A stretch of DNA of 54,545 bases, counting the filler, from Sluysia triapertura (taxonomy: Eukaryota): the NCBI GenBank assembly GCA_046118255.1. It is 4 parts of 4 records of this genome, joined end to end, with 100 filler letters (N's around TTAATTAATTAA, not from the genome) between each part and the next. Parts side by side here need not be neighbours in the genome. Positions count along the whole stretch, not along the records: positions 28,606 to 40,521 come from JBJNIA010156603.1; 3 more parts are not named here. One strand, written 5' to 3'. Both the position numbers and the translations under genes were made by a program. The notes below the pieces were generated by a model that saw only the letters and a list, made by a program, of their open reading frames with translations, made no database searches and was not told the DNA's origin. Positions 1,819 to 35,900 of this stretch are shown here, in pieces (positions within the stretch are counted from its first letter, which is position 1; every line of letters begins with the position of its first letter).

Positions 1819-3968
1819 CTAAATATTTATAGTTTAATAATAGTAACAGTGTTATTGTTATTGTTTTTTGCTATTGTTTTAAACGTGTACAAATATTACA
1901 ATAGATATTAGACGTATTTTGAAATATTATTTGAATATTAGAATTTTAAATAATTTCTCAATAATAATAATAACCATAATGATTATCTATTATTTCATTC
2001 TTGGATTTATTTGTACAAAAATTTATTAATTAAAAATATTAAAATTATTCTTAAAATATCAATTTCACAAAAATTAAAAATATCATGTTAATTAAAATTA
2101 TTAGAAATATTTAAAAATAATAAAAATATTATGTTAACTAATTAAAATTATTAAAAATATTAATTATTAAAAATATTATGTTAACATCATTATCAAAGTA
2201 CTACAAAAATAAAATTAAATGAATACCTTATTAATCAAATAAGTAGATAGAATAATTAGAAAGTTCTAAAAATGCAATCAAAGACCATCAGTGATTATTA
2301 AAGGTTTTTGACCATAATATTAAATTAAATAATTTTAATAAAGTTTAGCGTTCATTATCGTACTGCAAGAGCTTGCGAGTTTTAAGTAGCAATCAAGAAG
2401 AATAAATTGGAGGTAAATGAAATGTTAATAATATGAGCGAACTTTTCTTTAGTAATCAGCAAGGTAAATGGTATATTTCAGAATATGTTTGATATCAATT
2501 AAATAAAATATTTCAATTATTATGGTATATTATTTTTCAATTTGTAAAATCGCAACAAAATTGAGAGTTTGAGTAATATGTTACGTCCGTATTGAAAAAC
2601 GGCACCTTATTAATAAACTTTTTAACAATGAACTTGATTTTTCGTAAATTTTACAATCGAGTAAAATCGGTGGATCTTATACTATATAATAGACAACAAG
2701 AAATAAAGGTATATTACAAAATTTATAGCACAAATTTTAACAAGTAAAATGCAATAAAAATTTTCCAGATTAATATATAATCTTAATTAATTTATTTTAT
2801 ATTTATAAATTTTACAACTCCTATACTAAAAAGGGTTGATGTCTTTAACTAAATATTAAGTAGAGAGTTTACTATCTTTAATTAAAAAGGACCTCTTAAA
2901 ATAATCGAACTAACGAATAAATTTAAACATTGTGAAGCATTTTAAAATTATTACTTACTTACTTTCTTAATAAGTCAGTTACAGACTTATTTATATAAAA
3001 TAAATAATTAAATTTTAACATTTTAACACATTATTGTAAAAAAATTTTAAAAGTTTAATTTCGTTTTAGTTTTATTTATTAATGCATATTTTTATTAGAT
3101 TTTCTGATGAATTCTTTTACCAATTGAAAAATATTTTCTTCTACATTTCTGAATGACTTAGTATAAATTTATCCTGGAGGCTTGACTTAGTCTTATAATC
3201 TTAGGCTTGATTATAATCTTATATCTCAATCCGGAACGAAAGAAAGACTAATAAAATGAAATTATGTACCATTGTATAACGTGTACAAAGATTTCTTACG
3301 AACCATTTTTCTTTCTTTAAAATTTAATAGTTTAGTTTATTTTAATTCTTCATTAATACTATACTTGCTTATGATCTTACAACAAATTCAATAAATATTT
3401 TAATAAACGAATGCTACTCACTATTATCCGAATCAAACGAATATTTAAAATCAAATAATGTTCAAGATTATCAAGATTAAATAATGTTCACTTGTGTTTT
3501 TAGAGAGTAAAGAATTTCTATTTATAGTAAATTTTTCAGACAATTATTTATTTTATTGTAATACTGAATTTCTAAATTAAACTTAATTCAGTTATATATG
3601 GTTAAACTTCTATTCTATATTCATGTGCATCGTTATTAAATTTTACTATATAAATTTATAAATTTTACTTATAGATTTATCGATACAAATTCAATTCAAT
3701 TATGTAGTTAAGCTGAATTTTACTCACGCACGAAAATTTCTAATTCTTGATATTATTTTTTGTAATAATTGATATTGTTATTAATTGAAAGTAAAGTATT
3801 ATTATTATTTGTTTTTTTGTTGTAATATTATTATAATTTTTTTACGTGATGTCAACATAACAGTATTCTAATACAATGAGATCTCTTTCACCTCACGAAG
3901 TCATGTTAAAAGCGATATTTATTGAAATTTATTTTTAATATTGTCTGATAATTGTATTTTGAATTTAG

Positions 3969-28605: not shown

Positions 28606-28609
28606 TTTA

Positions 28610-28662
28610 AAATCCAACGCTTGGCCGTTAACTCAGTAAGACCAAGACGTTGGTGAACTCAC
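28610..28662 (+). other. Conserved 53-nt structured motif, copy B
   Basis: AAATCCAACGCTTGGCCGTTAACTCAGTAAGACCAAGACGTTGGTGAACTCAC; stems CCAACG/CGTTGG and CTTGG/CCAAG. Confidence 0.85.
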
Positions 28663-29713
28663 CTTTAAGTGACATCCACACTTACATTATTCTTGCAAAA
28701 TAAACTTACCCTGTCAACACTATTATTTACACTTTTAATTAATCTTGCATTATTATTACATTATGATTTTCTTTAGTGGGTCTGGAGGTATATAAATTAA
28801 GTATTTAAAAGTAATTAAATCAATAATTTAACAGGTATTTTACGTTGATTCTATGAACAGGATCTATAAAAATTATTTTTCGCGATTAGAATTAAATTCT
28901 AATCGTAGAAAACAAAATCTTCGACCAATTTTATATTTAAAACTATCTAATTTAATAACTTTATAGAAATTTTATTAGACAATTAAAGAGATAAGGATAT
29001 AATAAATTATACAAATTTGAGTAATAATGAAATATATTACGATGGAATTATTTTATAATTTCTAGGTGTGAGATTTTAATATAAGATCCAAACAATTATT
29101 AAATAATATTAGTAGATTTTACGATGATATCTCTTGGATATCGAAACCTTAATAAAAACAAACTAATTATTTAACAAAAAGTATCTGGTCAAAGTAGGAG
29201 TTTGAAGGAACTGTTGTGTCCCAACGATTATAGAAGTCCTGATAAAAATTATGTCTTGAAAAAATCTGCGTCAAACATTCTTTGGTCGAATCAATTAAAA
29301 ACTACGAAATGAAGATTGTATTTTTACAAATTGTAAAAAATTGTGTCGTAGCATAATTTATACATTTCTTATATATAAATTTTATTGACCTTGGCCAGAT
29401 CAACAATGTTTATAAAATTAAAACAAAAAGTAATTTAATATTTTAAATTAAAATTTAATGTCTACAAAAAATATTGCAATTTTTAATAATAAATATTAAA
29501 CATACCGTTATTTATCCAAAATAAAATTAATTGTTTAATTCCAATCAATAAAATTATCAAATTACAAAATTTATAAAATAAAATCAACAATTTATACAAA
29601 ACAAAATTTATGAAATAAAATAATACGTGCAAATATTTACAAAATTTCAAAAATTAATCACATGTAATCAGATTAGTCACAATTCATAACACATTTAATC
29701 AGATAGTCATAAC

Positions 29714-29732
29714 ATTATTATTATTATTATTA

Positions 29733-29772
<40 letters not shown>

Positions 29773-30660
29773 CGTCATTAATATCATTATTGTTACTAAT
29801 ATTATTAATACTTTTATCATTATTACTATCATAATTATTACTTTATAATTGCTATCATTAATATTATTATTTGCATTACTATTAATATGGTTATTATTAA
29901 CGTTTTATTACTATTATTACTATTATTAACATCATTATCATGAAAAAAACTTTTATTATTATTATTATCATTATTATTATTAGTATATTATTATCATTCT
30001 TATTAATTCCTTGCTTGACTAATAAAATATTTTAATTTATTAACTTATAATTGGATAATAGAAACAACATGGGAAGCTAGTAAACCTAACAGGATAGTCA
30101 CTGTAGTTGAACAGCGACAGCACGTGAATATATCGGGCTAGTCAATGCAGGAGCATTACGCTAGTCTGTGAACATATCGGGATAGTCGCGGAAGGAGTTA
30201 ATCGAATAACTATTAATATTACTATCATTATTAATATTATTATTAACTATAAAATAAATTATTAATTATAAAATAAAATGAGATTTCCTCGTTTCATTAA
30301 AATAATCATTTTTATTTATCATCAATACTATTACTATTAATATTATAACTAATAAACTTTCGTTATTAAAATTGATGTTATTATTTTTATTTTGATTATT
30401 ACTATCATCTTCGTCATAATTATCATCACGACACAAATCATCGTTATCATAATAACTGAAATCATAATTGATGTGGAATTATCTCATTCAACATCAACCT
30501 CTACTGGTCATCATTATCATCCTTACAACCAATATAAATTTGTCATGGCCATCGTTAAACACGTAATAGTTTATTTATTCATCATCATCACCATCATCAT
30601 CATTATCGTAATTATAATTCCAGTCATCATCCACTCATTTAGCACATCATCGTTGATCTA
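29714..30660. repeat. (ATT)n/(ATC)n low-complexity tract enclosing a GC-richer duplicated core
   Basis: Pure ATT run at ~29714-29772 with degenerate flanks. Direct repeat GTGAAYATATCGGGMTAGTC at 30124 and 30168. Confidence 0.85.
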
Positions 30661-32301
30661 GGATGTCAATTAATGATTCTTAAAATATTTGAAATGATCA
30701 AAGCTGTAGTAAATTATTTTTGTTTTTATTTTTATGAATTAAAATTTATAAAGTCAAACTTTCAATAGTGGAGCTCGACAAGTTGTTATAATGCAAGCTT
30801 GAGATGTAGTGACCTCAAGATGATAAAGTGCTGATCGATACATCTAGTAATGTCGATTGGAATTTTAAAGATGTAAATATTAGTAAAGTTATGATTGTGC
30901 TTTGCGTAATATCAAGTCGAGAGGATATATATAAGCTCTTAAGGATACTTTTTAAAGGTCGAATGTAAAATACAAGGTTTAAAAGGAGTCTATGATTTAT
31001 ATCTTTGTCATGGTAATAGAAATTATTTAGATTACTCACTAAATGATCATCAGGAATATAAATTGTGTTATGAAGATTATTCTGACTATCATATAGTTCC
31101 GTCGCAATTAGTTCTTATACCTACAATGATACGCCTAATATATTCAATCTGATGAAAATACAACAATAAGTTATTATAAAAACTAGCTAAATATTTAGTC
31201 AATAACCTAAAGAACTATTGGTTACTGTAATTCAAAGAATTAGACAGATAAAATTAAATAAAAATTTAATTGCAATCAAGGTGACGCAACATAAAAATTC
31301 AATTCTTATTTTCAAGGATAATTCTTAAAATTACAAGTAAATATTGAAATGATCTTCAGACTATGTATAACAAATGTATATAATTATTCATTTTTAACAT
31401 TTTATTTTTGGAAACACTCGATTTATGAACTTAATATATTATAATTTAATTTTCAATTTTCGTTTATATTTTTAATTTTATTGAAACATTTGTATTTGAA
31501 TTTTATTTTTGGAAATATCTAAAAATTTTATTAAGTAAGAAATTATACATTAATTGTTAATTAAAAAATTATTAAACTAACGTAATAAATAAATTTTAAT
31601 ATTTTGTTTTAATAAATTAAATTTAATCTGTAAACTATGACTAAACTACATACACATACAAATAATCACAAAGTTTTAAGTCCAATTTTAGTTTAATTAA
31701 AGTTTTACAGTAAACAAAATTTATAAATTTATAATTGTTAATTTAATTATTTATTTTACAGATTAATTATTTCAAATATTATTCATTTCAAATTTTAATA
31801 ATTTTATTAACAAAAAAATAATTCATTATTTTGGAAATTAAATAATCTCGTCGGAAATTAGATAATCTCGTCTTCTGATCAGTAAGTCTAAATTATTTAA
31901 ATTATTTTTATTTTTATTTATTATTTTTATGTACAAATTAATTATTATAAAATTATTATAAAAATCTCTGAATTAAAAAATAATTTTTTGTTTAAATTAT
32001 TCTAATTTATTTTTAATCTAACCTTGAAAAATAGTATAAATAGATGAACATTTAAAAAATTAAGACACAACTTTATTGACTCAACAATTTTATTGATACA
32101 ACGTTTCACACTTTTCTGATAATAAATTCTCGACGCAGTACTTCAACAGAATCCTTATTCGACTATAGCATTGTACTACATTATTTCAACGCAGTATTCT
32201 CACGAAGTCCTCATTAATTAACTACGAATTCCTCCTTGAAAAGAAAAATTTGCGATATATATTTCATTTGTTAACGTTAGTTTATCATTATAAGATATTT
32301 T

Positions 32302-32655
32302 GCAATTATAAATTGCTAAGTAAAGTTTCACTTAAAATATTAATTGTTAAAAAATTGAGTTTTCGTTTAGTGAAAACTAAGTAAAATATTCTTCAAATTT
32401 TTTGTATAAAGATTATTACTATTATAATAATCTAGTGTAAATTCGTTATTAAGTTCCTTATATATAATAGTTGAATTGTAAAATAACATTTTTTTTGAAT
32501 AATAAAAATTGATTATTATTTTGTCAGTCTTGTAATTTAAACGTACAGGTTCGAGAAAGAACCTAAGTAAAATATTTAATTATTGATAAGGGTTCACTTT
32601 ATTTGAACCCAAGTAAATTACCTATTAACGGTTTGTATAATCAAACCGAAGTAAA
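32302..32655 (+). repeat. Array of six sequence-variable hairpins, each followed by AAGTAAA/AGTGTAAA
   Basis: GCAATT/AATTGC (32302), AGTTTTC/GAAAACT (32358), AGATTATTA/TAATAATCT (32410), AGGTTC/GAACCT (32547), GGGTTCA/TGAACCC (32590), CGGTTTG/CAAACCG (32629). Each lies directly 5' of a GTAAA-containing tail. Confidence 0.85.
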
Positions 32656-32870
32656 ATCATAAAGTATAGTAGGTTTTTAAACTAGTATTAAAATCTATAC
32701 AAAATTCATTTGCCCCTAAAATCTCACTTATTTTATTATTGAATTATTAAATTATTTGATATTTTATTTTATTTTTGATATTCAAATAACCTATAATCTA
32801 GAGGATTCTTTTAGCATCTTAATCTTGACCATTTGAGTAAGTTCTTGACCTCCATTTTATTATTTACAAC

Positions 32871-32923
32871 AAATCCAACGGTTGGCCGTTTAGTCTGTAA
32901 CTCCAATACGTTGGTGGACTCAC
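32871..32923 (+). other. Conserved 53-nt structured motif, copy C
   Basis: AAATCCAACGGTTGGCCGTTTAGTCTGTAACTCCAATACGTTGGTGGACTCAC; additional outer pairing TACAA/TTGTA; ACCTCCA at 32848. Confidence 0.85.
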
Positions 32924-35900
32924 TTGTATTCTTAAGCTTTATTCTACTCTTTACCCATATTTCTTGCATTATTATTTAATTAACATAACGTTAGAAGAAG
33001 TTGCTCCATGAGATGCCTTGACTCAAATAGAAAGAATTCACTGTAATAGATCATTTGCATCTATTAAAATTTTCTCTGCACTATTTGGTTCAAAATCGAA
33101 CAAACATGTCGAAGTTGATTTTCATTCATGTTGTGATTCGTAAATTACGGTAAATACAGCTGAATATGTGAATTCGCAGTTTGTAACCAATATACAATAT
33201 CCATCAAATATCATGTTGAAACTTATTTTTGGCAATTCTTTAAGTGGTTAAGTATCAGTATCAAAGAGTATCTAATCTACAATCATTAATACATTTTGGA
33301 TAATTTAGTAATGTATTTGAGAAATTAAATTTTATACAGTTATTATTATAAGTATGTTATTTCCAATTTTATTATTTTATTTTTAATTTATTATTTAATA
33401 ATTTTATTTTTGCCACTAACTTTCAAAACTTTTACTTAAAAAATATTCATTGCTTTGCCATAAAATCCATTTGAATTGCTCGTATAACATTTTCGACAGG
33501 ATCTTTAAAAATATCAATATTTCAGAACTTGGCTTTGTGTTATACTTTTTGTTCAGATTTCTAGGTTGGCAGTGATATGGAAATGATAACCTATAATGAG
33601 ATTAGAAAAATACATTTTAAAATATCTTTAACAAGTAAAGCAAAACGAGATGGAGTACTGTCTAAGTAGAAAAATATTTTCCTGACACATTACTTTTGCC
33701 TTACAAATAGAATTAATTTATCTTCTAAGGCATGGGTCGATAAAATGTTGCAAGTATCACAGAATCATAAATATCTTTCTATATTCATTAAATTTAATAT
33801 GAAAATATTCTTTAAGAGAATATGTTTCTTGTATCAGATTTTTTAAAGCTCTAATTGTTTTTTTTTCATATAAAAGACATTTTTAAATTATAAATGGATA
33901 AATTTAGCTTCTCCAAAGTGACACAATTTTTGTAAATTTACGATATTTGGCTATTTATTACTCATACATACCCTATTAAAGAAATTTAAGTATCTGAAAT
34001 TTTAAATTAAAATACACATACTTGAATATGCAATTAAATAGAAAAATGAAAATTTTTTTGGATTAATAAAATAAATATTTATATTAAAAATTAAAATTCC
34101 GTTTTGTTTCAAATATTTAAAATTATTAAAGTAGAAAAATAATTGGCACAAGAAAATTTCAATATAAAAGTGTCATATAACTGCGTGAAACTTAGATCTA
34201 TTTATCAGTTTTAAAATAAAATAAAAAACTTGATGTAAAAATAAGTTTCTTTTTGAACAAAATTGCCTTTAATCAATATTCTATAAAGTTTTATTATATA
34301 TATATTTCACATCTGATTATCTTTACCTACTTTTAATTGTTAATAATAATTCTTTTAGTCGATACTTTAAATTTTATCATTATAATTATGAGTTATCGCG
34401 ATAGTCAGAGATGGAAGATCTATGTTGATAGTATTTAATATATAATAACAAAACCTAAATACAATTATATTGCTCAAATAAAAGGAGCAGAAAATATTGA
34501 CCAATGTATAATCTAAAATAAAAAACCTTTTCAGCATATTAAGGATTTTAAAATTTTAAAATTTTATCATTTTTATTTTTGTAAAATACATTCTCTAACC
34601 AATAATTGCTCGAAAATTATTAAAGAAAGTTGTGTTTAATTCTGATGCTTGTACATCATTTGTTATTCAAGAATGATGGCCAATAACTACTCAATTTTTG
34701 TCACAATATTTATTATAATCAGCTTCTCTCTAGTTCTATATTCCACTATGGTGAAAATTTCTTGAAGCTAATTAAGTGGTAAGGAATTTTGACTTCTTTT
34801 TTCGTGTTTATTTGCTAATTTAAAGATTCACCTTTTTCTTTAAAGGAATATTAGAGTACTTTTCGATATGTATTAAGATAGTTGTCTAAATTCAGATATT
34901 TCTTTGATTTTATAAGGTAACATAATTTATCTCTATTTTTAATATTACTTAGTTTTTTTCAAACTTAATAACTTAATAACAAAAATAGTTAGAATTTCTT
35001 ATTTCACATTAGCATATCAGGAATGTTTTTTTGTAAAATACATGAAGCTGAAATATTTACAATATGCATACATTTTTCATTTGTTTGAACAATATTTCTA
35101 TTCCAGATGGATTTTTCATCATCAAACATTAAAAATGTGACTGTCACGCTAGAAAAATTTAAACATGAATTAATCGAAGATCAATTTTGAAACCATAAGC
35201 AGTGTTCTAGATTCGAAAACTTATATTAATTGTAAGCATTGATAGTTGTTTACAATATGTTGCAAGAGTAACAAGAAAATACTTAAAATACTGATTTGTC
35301 ATAACTAATGTTTACCATCAGAAAAAATCAATATCTAGATAGACTACTTTGTATTGATTTGACTGGTATAATAACTATAATAGAATATTACAACATTAGT
35401 AAAGGTAAACCACAGATCGAAACATAAAATAAATTCAAAACAATCATTATAAATTGAAATAATAAATAACAAAAAAATTTATTTCATAAATATTTTAATA
35501 AATTACAAATAATAATAATTAATATTATTGTTGTGGTAACTGTCATTTAATAATTACTTTGTTTATTTTCAATTTATGTTTTAAAATATCTTAGGAATGC
35601 ATTATAGTGTATTATTCTTTTTTCATTTTAAAAGCTTATATTTGAAAAAAATTAATTTTTGATTTCAAAATAAAATAAATTAAACATTTTTCATATTATT
35701 TTATTAATATTAAGAGAAATTATATTTGGATCTTTATTTATGAAAAGATTTAACTATGTTTTAAGAAAGAGGGAGTTATTAATATGAACAATACAATAGT
35801 TCACAATTGTAAATCAATAAGTCATCGTTTTATTTTTTATCTCATAAAATTTCGTATTCGTATTTTGATTAAGATAAACAAAGTGGAAAGTATTTTGAAA

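What the first reader, a model, noticed from the sequence alone, without database searches (positions are those of the whole stretch)
32302..32655. Polar array of variable hairpins, each tagged by a constant GTAAA tail
Seen: six hairpins with 6-9-bp stems of different sequence, all in one orientation, each directly followed by AAGTAAA or AGTGTAAA and several preceded by TAA. The array sits ~220 nt upstream of motif copy C. It is not a tandem repeat and not CRISPR: the hairpin varies and only the short tail is constant. Established analogues are hairpin-plus-tetranucleotide sites of HUH Y1 enzymes (IS608 TTAC, which is the reverse complement of GTAA; REP GTAG) and the TTTAC..GTAAA-bounded baculovirus hr palindromes. 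Inference: a multivalent, structure-specific binding platform in ssDNA or RNA.
Basis: partly seen in the sequence, partly recalled or inferred. Interest (0 to 1): 0.82.

Follow-up and report, generated by a model that had tools for sequence, protein, structure and literature searches.

The report
Hairpin array inside an abundant repeat
The six hairpins, each ending in GTAAA, are real and far beyond chance, but they are one module of a very high-copy mobile-element-like repeat in an AT-rich, animal-like genome, where they most likely act as the signal read by the enzyme that copies the element.

Summary
Six perfect 6-9 bp hairpins lie on the + strand at 32302-32655, each followed within 0-1 nt by AAGTAAA, or by AGTGTAAA in one case. 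No dinucleotide shuffle came near this cluster: 6 observed against at most 3 in 2000 shuffled strands.

The array is not a unique locus. Contigs from three coded public runs show that 31667-33006 is multi-copy and that the flank from 33007 has no depth. The hp4-hp6 module (32533-32678) and the 53-nt motif (32871-32945) are by far the most abundant parts. Other copies join these two parts through spacers of different length.

Across copies, the listed variable sites fall in spacers and loops (12 of 13). Stems and tails are conserved (P=0.004). Four paralogous units share a scaffold NGKTTYN, and 4 of their 7 stem pairs have changed on both sides.

Best reading: an iterated, selected stem-loop-plus-tail cis-signal of a non-autonomous mobile element. 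The enzyme class is unresolved. A 3' tail read by the reverse transcriptase of a stringent LINE is slightly favoured over a rolling-circle (Helentron-like) signal, and a functionless palindromic minisatellite remains possible. Interest is moderate.

The parts
32302..32324 (+). Unit hp1: hairpin GCAATT-ATA-AATTGC plus tail TAAGTAAA
32358..32385 (+). Unit hp2: hairpin AGTTTTC-GTTTAGT-GAAAACT plus tail AAGTAAA. Its loop matches the family-majority hp5 loop at 6 of 7 positions.
32410..32441 (+). Unit hp3: 9-bp hairpin AGATTATTA-CTATTA-TAATAATCT plus tail AGTGTAAA. In other copies the sequence right after this tail (32443) joins directly to 32534.
32444..32536 (+). Stretch largely absent from some other copies (joints skip 32444-32533 and 32465-32542). 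It carries two more GTAA tails (TTGTAAA 32476-32482, TTGTAAT 32530-32536) and an A/T-only 8-bp hairpin (32498-32520).
32533..32678 (+). High-copy module holding hp4 (32547-32571), hp5 (32590-32617) and hp6 (32629-32655), each a hairpin plus AAGTAAA. Contig branch points lie at 32533 and 32678. Summed depth is about 25,000-99,000 in run X1.
32679..32870 (+). A/T-rich linker between the hairpin module and the motif. Its length varies among copies (joints 32678>32863 and 32731>32832).
32871..32945 (+). The 53-nt motif (copy C) and its tail. An imperfect hairpin CCAACGGTTGG...CCAATACGTTGG has GTAA in its loop. This is the most abundant part of the repeat (summed depth about 199,000 in X1).
28610..28667 (+). 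Motif copy A, 83% identical to copy C over 58 nt. It lies at the cut left edge of the piece, so what stands upstream of it is unknown.
31667..33006 (+). Full extent of the multi-copy DNA at this locus (a composite repeat). Depth in other runs rises from about 400 to about 3,800 up to hp3. There is no depth from 33007 on.

Best explanation
The array is one module of a very abundant, non-coding interspersed repeat, that is, a non-autonomous mobile element about 1.3 kb long at this locus (31667-33006).

The module is built from iterated units of 38-61 nt. Each unit is a short stem-loop followed by (A)AGTAAA. The units arose by duplication or serial addition. They have kept base pairing and the tail while their spacers diverged.

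I read the stem-loop plus tail as the cis-signal that the mobilising enzyme recognises on a single strand, with the stem read as shape and the tail (perhaps also the loop) read as sequence. Having several units in one orientation gives redundant start or stop sites.

The enzyme I think most likely, at about 0.3, is the reverse transcriptase of a 'stringent' LINE. That enzyme needs a 3' stem-loop followed by a short terminal repeat. Polar stacks of 3' ends would then arise by priming in an existing tail or by template jumping.

Shown: the repeat nature, the conservation pattern, the co-variation and the linkage to the motif. Inferred: that the unit is a recognition signal, and which enzyme reads it.

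The confidence of 0.5 is for 'a selected cis-signal of a mobile element'. That the array is repeat-borne is about 0.9.
For: (1) The array is far from random and strictly polar.

(2) Contigs of three coded runs laid on 31600-33600 show multi-copy DNA exactly over 31667-33006 and nothing beyond. Depth peaks at the hairpin-plus-tail cores: about 98,700 at the hp5 loop against about 26,000 in both neighbouring spacers. It drops about four-fold just after the hp6 tail, from 40,925 at 32648 to 9,692 at 32664.

(3) Other copies lack whole units. The junctions fall right after a tail or right before hp4 (32387>32542, 32443>32534, 32464>32543).

(4) Of 13 listed variable sites in 32538-32671, 11 are in spacers, 1 in a loop and 1 in a closing pair. 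None is in a tail (binomial P=0.0044).

(5) hp2, hp4, hp5 and hp6 share the 5' arm pattern NGKTTYN. Four of their 7 pairs changed on both sides and 26 of 26 cells pair. The family-majority hp5 loop GTTTATT is almost the hp2 loop GTTTAGT, although the two stems differ at 4 compensated positions.

(6) There is a precedent. Stringent LINEs and their SINEs need a 3' stem-loop plus short terminal repeats, such as UnaL2 TGTAA and I factor TAA (PMC3747384). In these the stem is read structurally and the loop specifically (PMC4176376). hp3 and two hairpin-poor units end in TGTAA.
Against: - No autonomous partner, terminus or target-site duplication was seen. Only this one copy could be read letter by letter.
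- The tail occurs once per unit, not as a microsatellite run.
- In many copies the hairpin module is followed by further conserved sequence (linker plus motif), so the tails are internal there, not terminal.
- Depth figures are summed k-mer depths of short contigs, not copy numbers. 53 variant rows were not shown, and A/T-rich linkers align poorly, which could exaggerate the contrast between cores and spacers.
- The co-variation count is partly circular, because the units were picked as perfect hairpins.
- There are no RNA data.
Confidence: 0.5

Rival explanations
1. Rolling-circle (HUH) element. The composite is a Helentron/HINE-like or other Rep-mobilised non-autonomous element. The hairpin-plus-tail units are iterated single-strand DNA signals for termination or recognition, and the 53-nt motif is its subterminal palindromic repeat. 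This is a sub-variant of the 'selected cis-signal' reading with a different enzyme.
For: [quoted passage not shown]
- The motif unit 32871-32945 has two near-palindromic arms starting 3-4 nt from its left branch point.
- It also has short palindromes (CTTAAG, AAGCTT) about 10 nt from its right branch point.
- Spacer and unit number vary among copies.
- A variable hairpin plus a constant short tail is the logic of Helitron 3' ends and of REP/IS200-IS605 sites (my own knowledge).
Against: - The two arms lie 17 nt apart, not at opposite ends of the element. No matching arm stands at the left end of the composite.
- Flanking T/TT is not evident in copy C.
- The constant part is GTAAA, not CTRR, and it lies where host DNA would be in a Helitron.
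- The branch points at 32871 and 32945 are soft, because the loose-end consensus still resembles the window.
- No Rep gene was seen.
Confidence: 0.2
2. Functionless palindromic minisatellite inside a mobile element. The units are a diverged internal tandem repeat. Their inverted repeats are made and kept perfect by replication template switching or intrastrand repair, not by selection.
For: - Internal tandem repeats are common in non-autonomous elements (PMC4067079, PMC7492417).
- Unit number varies among copies.
- A/T-rich DNA is rich in short hairpins: 153 perfect hairpins of at least 6 bp in 11.9 kb.
- Upstream of the array the repeat holds other tandem duplications of about 55 nt.
Against: - Tails are constant and stems conserved while the spacers are unalignable between units and variable between copies.
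- hp2 and hp5 keep the loop but differ at four compensated stem positions.
- The G:C-containing hairpins of the piece are concentrated here, and all of them carry the tail.
Confidence: 0.2
3. Host function. The array is a host regulatory or small-RNA locus, for example a processing, termination or poly(A) (AGTAAA) signal array, or a binding platform for a host factor.
For: AGTAAA is a known variant poly(A) hexamer (my own knowledge). The hairpins fold as predicted on either strand, with z scores from -2.6 to -3.4.
Against: - The module is present in very many copies with different flanks, and the unique flank is not shared.
- There is no Rfam match, no tRNA and no gene nearby.
- The stems are too short for miRNA-type precursors.
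Confidence: 0.05
4. Chance clustering in A/T-rich DNA.
For: Short hairpins and GTAAA are individually common here (35 GTAAA on the + strand).
Against: No shuffle reached the observed cluster: 0 of 2000 shuffled strands and 0 of 5000 shuffles of the region alone. The same units recur in other genomes.
Confidence: 0.01

Closest known systems
3' tails of stringent-type LINEs and their partner SINEs (L2/CR1 clades; eel UnaL2/UnaSINE1, zebrafish ZfL2)
   Same: Both have a short stem-loop directly followed by a short constant A-rich sequence, such as TGTAA. The stem is tolerated as a structure while other parts are read as sequence. Both are one-orientation, high-copy and often reduced to the 3' end (PMC3747384, PMC4176376).
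   Different: Here the tail is single, not a terminal microsatellite. Several units stand in tandem, and many copies continue downstream into a linker and a second conserved hairpin. No LINE with this tail was seen.
HINE/DINE-1, the non-autonomous Helentrons (rolling-circle elements)
   Same: Both are very high-copy and non-coding. Both have palindromic subterminal repeats, a central region of tandem repeats whose number varies, a small 3' palindrome and A/T-rich surroundings (PMC4067079).
   Different: The arms of the 53-nt motif are adjacent rather than at both ends. No T/TT flanks and no Rep/helicase partner were shown. The described central repeats of HINEs are not hairpin-plus-tail units.
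Bacterial REP/BIME elements with RAYT, and IS200/IS605 ends (HUH Y1)
   Same: A small hairpin is paired with a conserved tetranucleotide next to its foot. On the - strand this reads TTAC-TT-hairpin, compared with GTAG-hairpin in REPs. Units cluster in arrays with variable spacers.
   Different: Those are prokaryotic systems, whereas this is non-coding, animal-like DNA. REPs of one family share one stem sequence and often alternate in orientation. IS608 cleavage sites lie 10-19 nt from the hairpin. The comparison rests on my own knowledge and was not tested.
Baculovirus hr palindromes
   Same: Only the GTAAA letters at one side.
   Different: The hr units are one shared imperfect palindrome of about 30 bp, bounded on both sides (TTTAC...GTAAA), in a gene-dense viral genome. 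Here there is no 5' TTTAC, the stems differ, and no ORF exceeds 101 aa in 11.9 kb.

Membership tests
Stringent LINE/SINE 3' tail | Stem-loop immediately upstream of a short constant 3' sequence, in one orientation | tested here: met
   Six of six units have the tail 0-1 nt after the stem, all on the + strand.
Stringent LINE/SINE 3' tail | The tail is the 3' terminus of the element, usually as a short tandem repeat, and homology between copies ends there | tested here: inconclusive
   Depth falls about four-fold just after the hp5 and hp6 tails. However, many copies continue to the motif, and the tail is not iterated.
Stringent LINE/SINE 3' tail | A partner LINE encoding EN/RT carries the same 3' tail | not testable with these tools
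   No further genome sequence was reachable. A LINE-like remnant may lie at 38568-38924 (-), identified from memory only with no Pfam or homologue match. Any 3' end it has would lie near the (TTA)n run at 38404-38448, which is a different kind of tail.
Stringent LINE/SINE 3' tail | Variable 5' truncation and target-site duplications | tested here: inconclusive
   Unit lengths vary (38-61 nt) and depth rises towards hp3. No target-site duplication could be defined from one copy.
Helentron/HINE | 12-15 bp subterminal inverted repeats, one near each end of the element | tested here: not met
   Both arms sit inside the 53-nt motif, 17 nt apart. No third arm lies at the left end of the composite.
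Helentron/HINE | A 5-10 bp palindrome 8-35 bp from the 3' end, and central tandem repeats | tested here: inconclusive
   CTTAAG and AAGCTT lie about 10 nt before the branch point at 32945. Unit number varies among copies. The true terminus is not defined.
Helentron/HINE | Insertion between T residues, with no target-site duplication | tested here: inconclusive
   Copy A is preceded by TTT and copy C by CAAC. The boundaries are soft.
Canonical Helitron | 3' hairpin about 10 nt upstream of a terminal CTRR, followed by host T | tested here: not met
   CTAA or CTAG overlaps the stem foot in 4 of 6 units, and only hp3 is followed by T. The invariant GTAAA would be host DNA under this model.
IS200/IS605 or REP/RAYT (HUH Y1) | A Y1 HUH transposase gene is associated, with subterminal hairpins and cleavage tetranucleotides at defined distances | not testable with these tools
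   There is no ORF over 101 aa under any genetic code in the piece.
CRISPR array or simple tandem repeat | A constant repeat of fixed length, regularly spaced | tested here: not met
   TRF and the direct-repeat search report nothing at 32302-32655. The stems differ and the tail-to-tail spacings are 61, 56, 41, 89, 46 and 38 nt.
Known RNA families (Rfam) | A match to a covariance model | tested here: not met
   The only hit in the piece is a chance-level snoRNA hit at 30580-30634 (E=0.37). No tRNA-like gene was found.

The most novel reading that the evidence does not exclude
The hairpin-plus-GTAA(A) unit of about 28-35 nt is itself a minimal mobile unit of an animal genome. It would be copied or inserted as single-stranded DNA by a Rep/HUH-type enzyme, as a eukaryotic counterpart of bacterial REP/RAYT or IS200/IS605 sites. 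New units would land next to existing tails.

This would explain three observations: the sharp excess of depth over the bare core (hp5 about four-fold over both of its spacers), the non-homologous spacers, and the GTAA that also sits in the loop of the linked 53-nt motif.
Probability: 0.06. Interest if true: 0.85.

Novelty: new variant of a known kind. Interest (0 to 1): 0.4.

Why it matters
If the reading holds, this repeat gives a clean natural example of a cis-signal defined by shape plus a short constant tail. The signal is iterated and kept by compensated changes across a very large family of copies.

That makes the recognition rule of the mobilising enzyme directly testable: which stems, loops and tail letters are tolerated. 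It would also help to classify what appears to be one of the most abundant repeats of this A/T-rich genome and its relatives.

It also matters as a caution. A striking 'platform' in a single window turned out to be one copy of a repeat, not a unique functional locus.

Tried and rejected
- Coding capacity: no ORF over 101 aa under the standard code, code 4 or other codes. The long 'ORFs' under ciliate codes are an A/T-richness artefact.
- tRNA, tmRNA and Rfam: nothing relevant.
- More copies inside the piece: only motif copy A. BLAST hits of the element to the rest of the piece are low-complexity noise at 57-63% identity. A relaxed hairpin-tail scan found nothing convincing.
- More copies elsewhere: two pattern scans of viral contigs gave only chance single hits in unrelated, GC-richer contigs. 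Two metagenome scans and one prokaryote-genome scan gave nothing.
- Reaching related genome contigs through translated ORFs over the motif, the array and a LINE-like remnant: no homologues, and the exact sequences are not in the protein collection. Pfam gave nothing on six ORFs.
- Literature string search for the motif and hairpin sequences: no relevant paper.
- Baculovirus hr, CRISPR, canonical Helitron 3' end, Pumilio-type UGUANAUA sites, splice-donor array, tRNA-derived B box (GGTTCGA in hp4) and hammerhead ribozyme were considered. They were dropped for lack of the defining features or of any tool support.
- A 9-nt direct repeat TTTAATTAA near both edges of the composite, and TTTAAAC at both edges of the hp4-6 module, were considered as target-site duplications. 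By my own rough estimate, not a tool result, such matches are too likely by chance in this base composition.

Full report
**Setting**

The usable piece (28606-40521) has about 21% G+C. It has no ORF over 101 aa in any frame under the standard code or code 4. It has no tRNA, and its only Rfam match is a chance-level hit. It reads as non-coding eukaryotic DNA, probably from an animal. This is supported only by my memory of a LINE-type C-terminal remnant on the - strand at 38568-38924 ('LKELHWFPIKNKNRIQ', 'GDRLYTVYVSKIYNRLPENV'). Pfam and a homologue search did not confirm that remnant.

**The observation**

Each is followed after 0-1 nt by AAGTAAA, or by AGTGTAAA for hp3.

I scanned for a perfect stem of at least 6 bp, a loop of 3-12 nt and a gap of at most 4 nt before GTAAA.
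- The piece has 7 hits on the + strand, 6 of them within 354 nt, and 2 scattered hits on the - strand.
- In 2000 dinucleotide-shuffled strands the mean was 1.5 hits per strand and the largest cluster was 3, seen once.
- 5000 shuffles of the 354-nt region alone never gave more than 3 hits.

Short A/T hairpins are common here, with 153 in the piece. However, of the 11 hairpins with at least two G:C pairs, five lie in the array and all five carry the tail. Each hairpin is also predicted by DNA folding on either strand, with z scores from -2.6 to -3.4 for the 146-150-nt segments. TRF and the direct-repeat search see no repeat in the interval. A relaxed scan finds no further convincing unit anywhere else in the piece.

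**It is a repeat, not a unique locus**

One search for sequencing runs found three coded runs of three coded organisms. Their contigs were laid on 31600-33600 at 80% likeness or more.

Multi-copy DNA covers 31667-33006 and then stops. From 33007 on there is essentially no depth. Summed contig depth in run X1 is:

| Interval | Content | Summed depth (X1) |
|---|---|---|
| 31667-32270 | left part of the repeat | about 400-1,300 |
| 32270-32470 | hp1-hp3 | 2,400-3,800 |
| 32538-32671 | hp4-hp6 | 48,000-66,000 |
| 32873-32939 | 53-nt motif | about 199,000 |

At single positions the contrast is sharper. Depth is 98,679 in the hp5 loop (32597) against about 26,000 at 32586 and 32618, in the two spacers beside hp5. 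It is 40,925 at the last stem base of hp6 (32648) against 9,692 at 32664, nine bases past its tail.

Contig branch points lie at 32533, 32678, 32846, 32871 and 32945.

Other copies lack whole stretches, and the junctions fall right after a tail or right before hp4: 32387>32542 in X1, 32443>32534 in both X2 and X3, and 32464>32543 in X3.

The hairpin module and the motif are linked elsewhere too:
- An X3 contig runs from 32622 to 32859.
- Another X3 contig joins 32678 directly to 32863.
- An X2 contig joins 32731 to 32832.

These depths are summed k-mer depths of short contigs. They are not copy numbers, and they include cross-matches between paralogous units.

**Signs of constraint**

One search lists 13 variable positions inside 32538-32671. 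Eleven are in spacers, one is the first loop base of hp5, and one is the closing pair of hp6. None is in a tail. Stems plus tails make up 46% of the interval, which gives a binomial P of 0.0044. There are caveats: 53 further rows were not shown, and A/T-rich linkers align poorly.

Within the window, hp2, hp4, hp5 and hp6 align as homologous units with a 5' arm of the form NGKTTYN. On that alignment 26 of 26 cells pair, and 4 of 7 pairs show changes on both sides. No shuffle or slid register comes close. This count is partly circular, since the units were chosen as perfect hairpins.

The majority letter of the family at 32597 (G) turns the hp5 loop into GTTTATT. That matches the hp2 loop GTTTAGT at six of seven positions, yet the two stems differ at four positions, all compensated. 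The sequences after the tail and before the next hairpin are not alignable between units.

The pattern is therefore a constant tail, a maintained helix, a partly conserved loop and free spacers.

**What it most likely is**

The array is a module of a high-copy, non-coding mobile element in which a stem-loop-plus-tail unit is iterated and selected. The most economical function is the cis-signal recognised by the enzyme that mobilises the element.

Two enzyme classes fit.

(a) Reverse transcriptase of a stringent LINE.
- Such LINEs and their SINEs require a 3' stem-loop followed by a short terminal repeat. UnaL2 ends in TGTAA repeats and the I factor in TAA repeats (PMC3747384).
- The stem is read structurally and the loop specifically (PMC4176376).
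- Polar stacks of 3' ends would arise by priming in an existing tail or by template jumping.
- The fall in depth just after the hp5 and hp6 tails, the variable unit length, the rising depth towards hp3, and the TGTAA form of three tails all fit this.
- Against it: the tail is not iterated, many copies run on into the linker and motif, and no partner LINE or target-site duplication was seen.

(b) A rolling-circle element.
- HINE/DINE-1 elements combine palindromic subterminal repeats, variable central tandem repeats and a small 3' palindrome (PMC4067079). The 75-nt motif unit loosely resembles that layout.
- However, its arms are adjacent rather than terminal, and no third arm was found.
- T flanks are not evident, and GTAAA is not a Helitron terminus.

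I put the probabilities as follows:

| Reading | Probability |
|---|---|
| Repeat-borne | about 0.9 |
| Selected cis-signal | about 0.5-0.6 |
| RT type | about 0.3 |
| Rolling-circle type | about 0.2 |
| Functionless palindromic minisatellite kept perfect by template switching | about 0.2 |
| Host function | about 0.05 |
| Chance | about 0.01 |

The logic of a structure-specific platform on a single strand is supported by the conservation pattern. The specific HUH Y1 link could not be tested. On the - strand the unit reads TTAC-TT-hairpin, which resembles the GTAG-hairpin layout of bacterial REPs, but that is a resemblance recalled from memory in a eukaryotic setting. The baculovirus hr analogy fails because there is no 5' TTTAC, no shared palindrome and no viral gene density.

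**What could not be done**

No further sequence of this genome or of its relatives could be read.
- Scans of viral, metagenome and prokaryote collections gave nothing or only chance hits.
- Translated ORFs over the motif and the array are absent from the protein collections.
- No paper holds these strings.

As a result, the genome-wide census, the search for long coding copies and the empty-site analysis remain the decisive next steps.

**Verdict**

This is a real and statistically robust feature. It is one copy of a module of an abundant, unclassified mobile element whose hairpin-plus-tail cores are conserved. Interest is moderate at 0.4. I class it as a new variant of a known kind.

Noticed in passing
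window 28610-28667 and 32871-32928: The 53/58-nt motif is 83% identical between the two copies. It folds into an imperfect hairpin (CCAACGNTTGG / CCAANNCGTTGG) with an invariant TCNGTAA in the loop. It is the most abundant part of the repeat in all three runs (summed depth about 199,000, 162 and 336). Weak homology continues downstream with a 24-nt indel.
   Followed up: partly
window 38568-38924 (- strand) with 38404-38448: Two adjacent short ORFs read like the decayed C-terminal region of a LINE ORF2 ('LKELHWFPIKNKNRIQ', 'GDRLYTVYVSKIYNRLPENV'). On that strand they are followed by a G:C stem (GCGCT...AGCGC) and a (TTA)15 run. The identification is from memory only; Pfam and the homologue search gave nothing.
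   Followed up: partly
window 32133-32218: Just upstream of the array, inside the same repeat, lies a diverged direct duplication of about 55 nt (CGCAGTAYTTC..AC.GAA.TCCT.ATT). Another copy in run X1 replaces 32172-32229 with 26 different letters.
   Followed up: no
window 30126-30189: A small G+C-richer island holds a direct repeat GAAYATATCGGGMTAGTC about 45 nt apart. It lies between two long ATT/ATC-rich low-complexity tracts (29714-30005 and 30209-30660).
   Followed up: no
window 33133-33154: A mini-palindrome CGTAAATTACG is directly followed by GTAAA, 190 nt beyond the right edge of the multi-copy DNA. It may be chance or a decayed unit.
   Followed up: no
window 31833-31872: A 20-nt unit, GGAAATTAAATAATCTCGTC, is duplicated in tandem at 95% identity inside the left part of the repeat.
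   Followed up: no
window 32325-32378: hp2 has an alternative long-range pairing, GTTTCACT (32325-32332) with AGTGAAAC (32370-32377). This competes with the local 7-bp hairpin.
   Followed up: no
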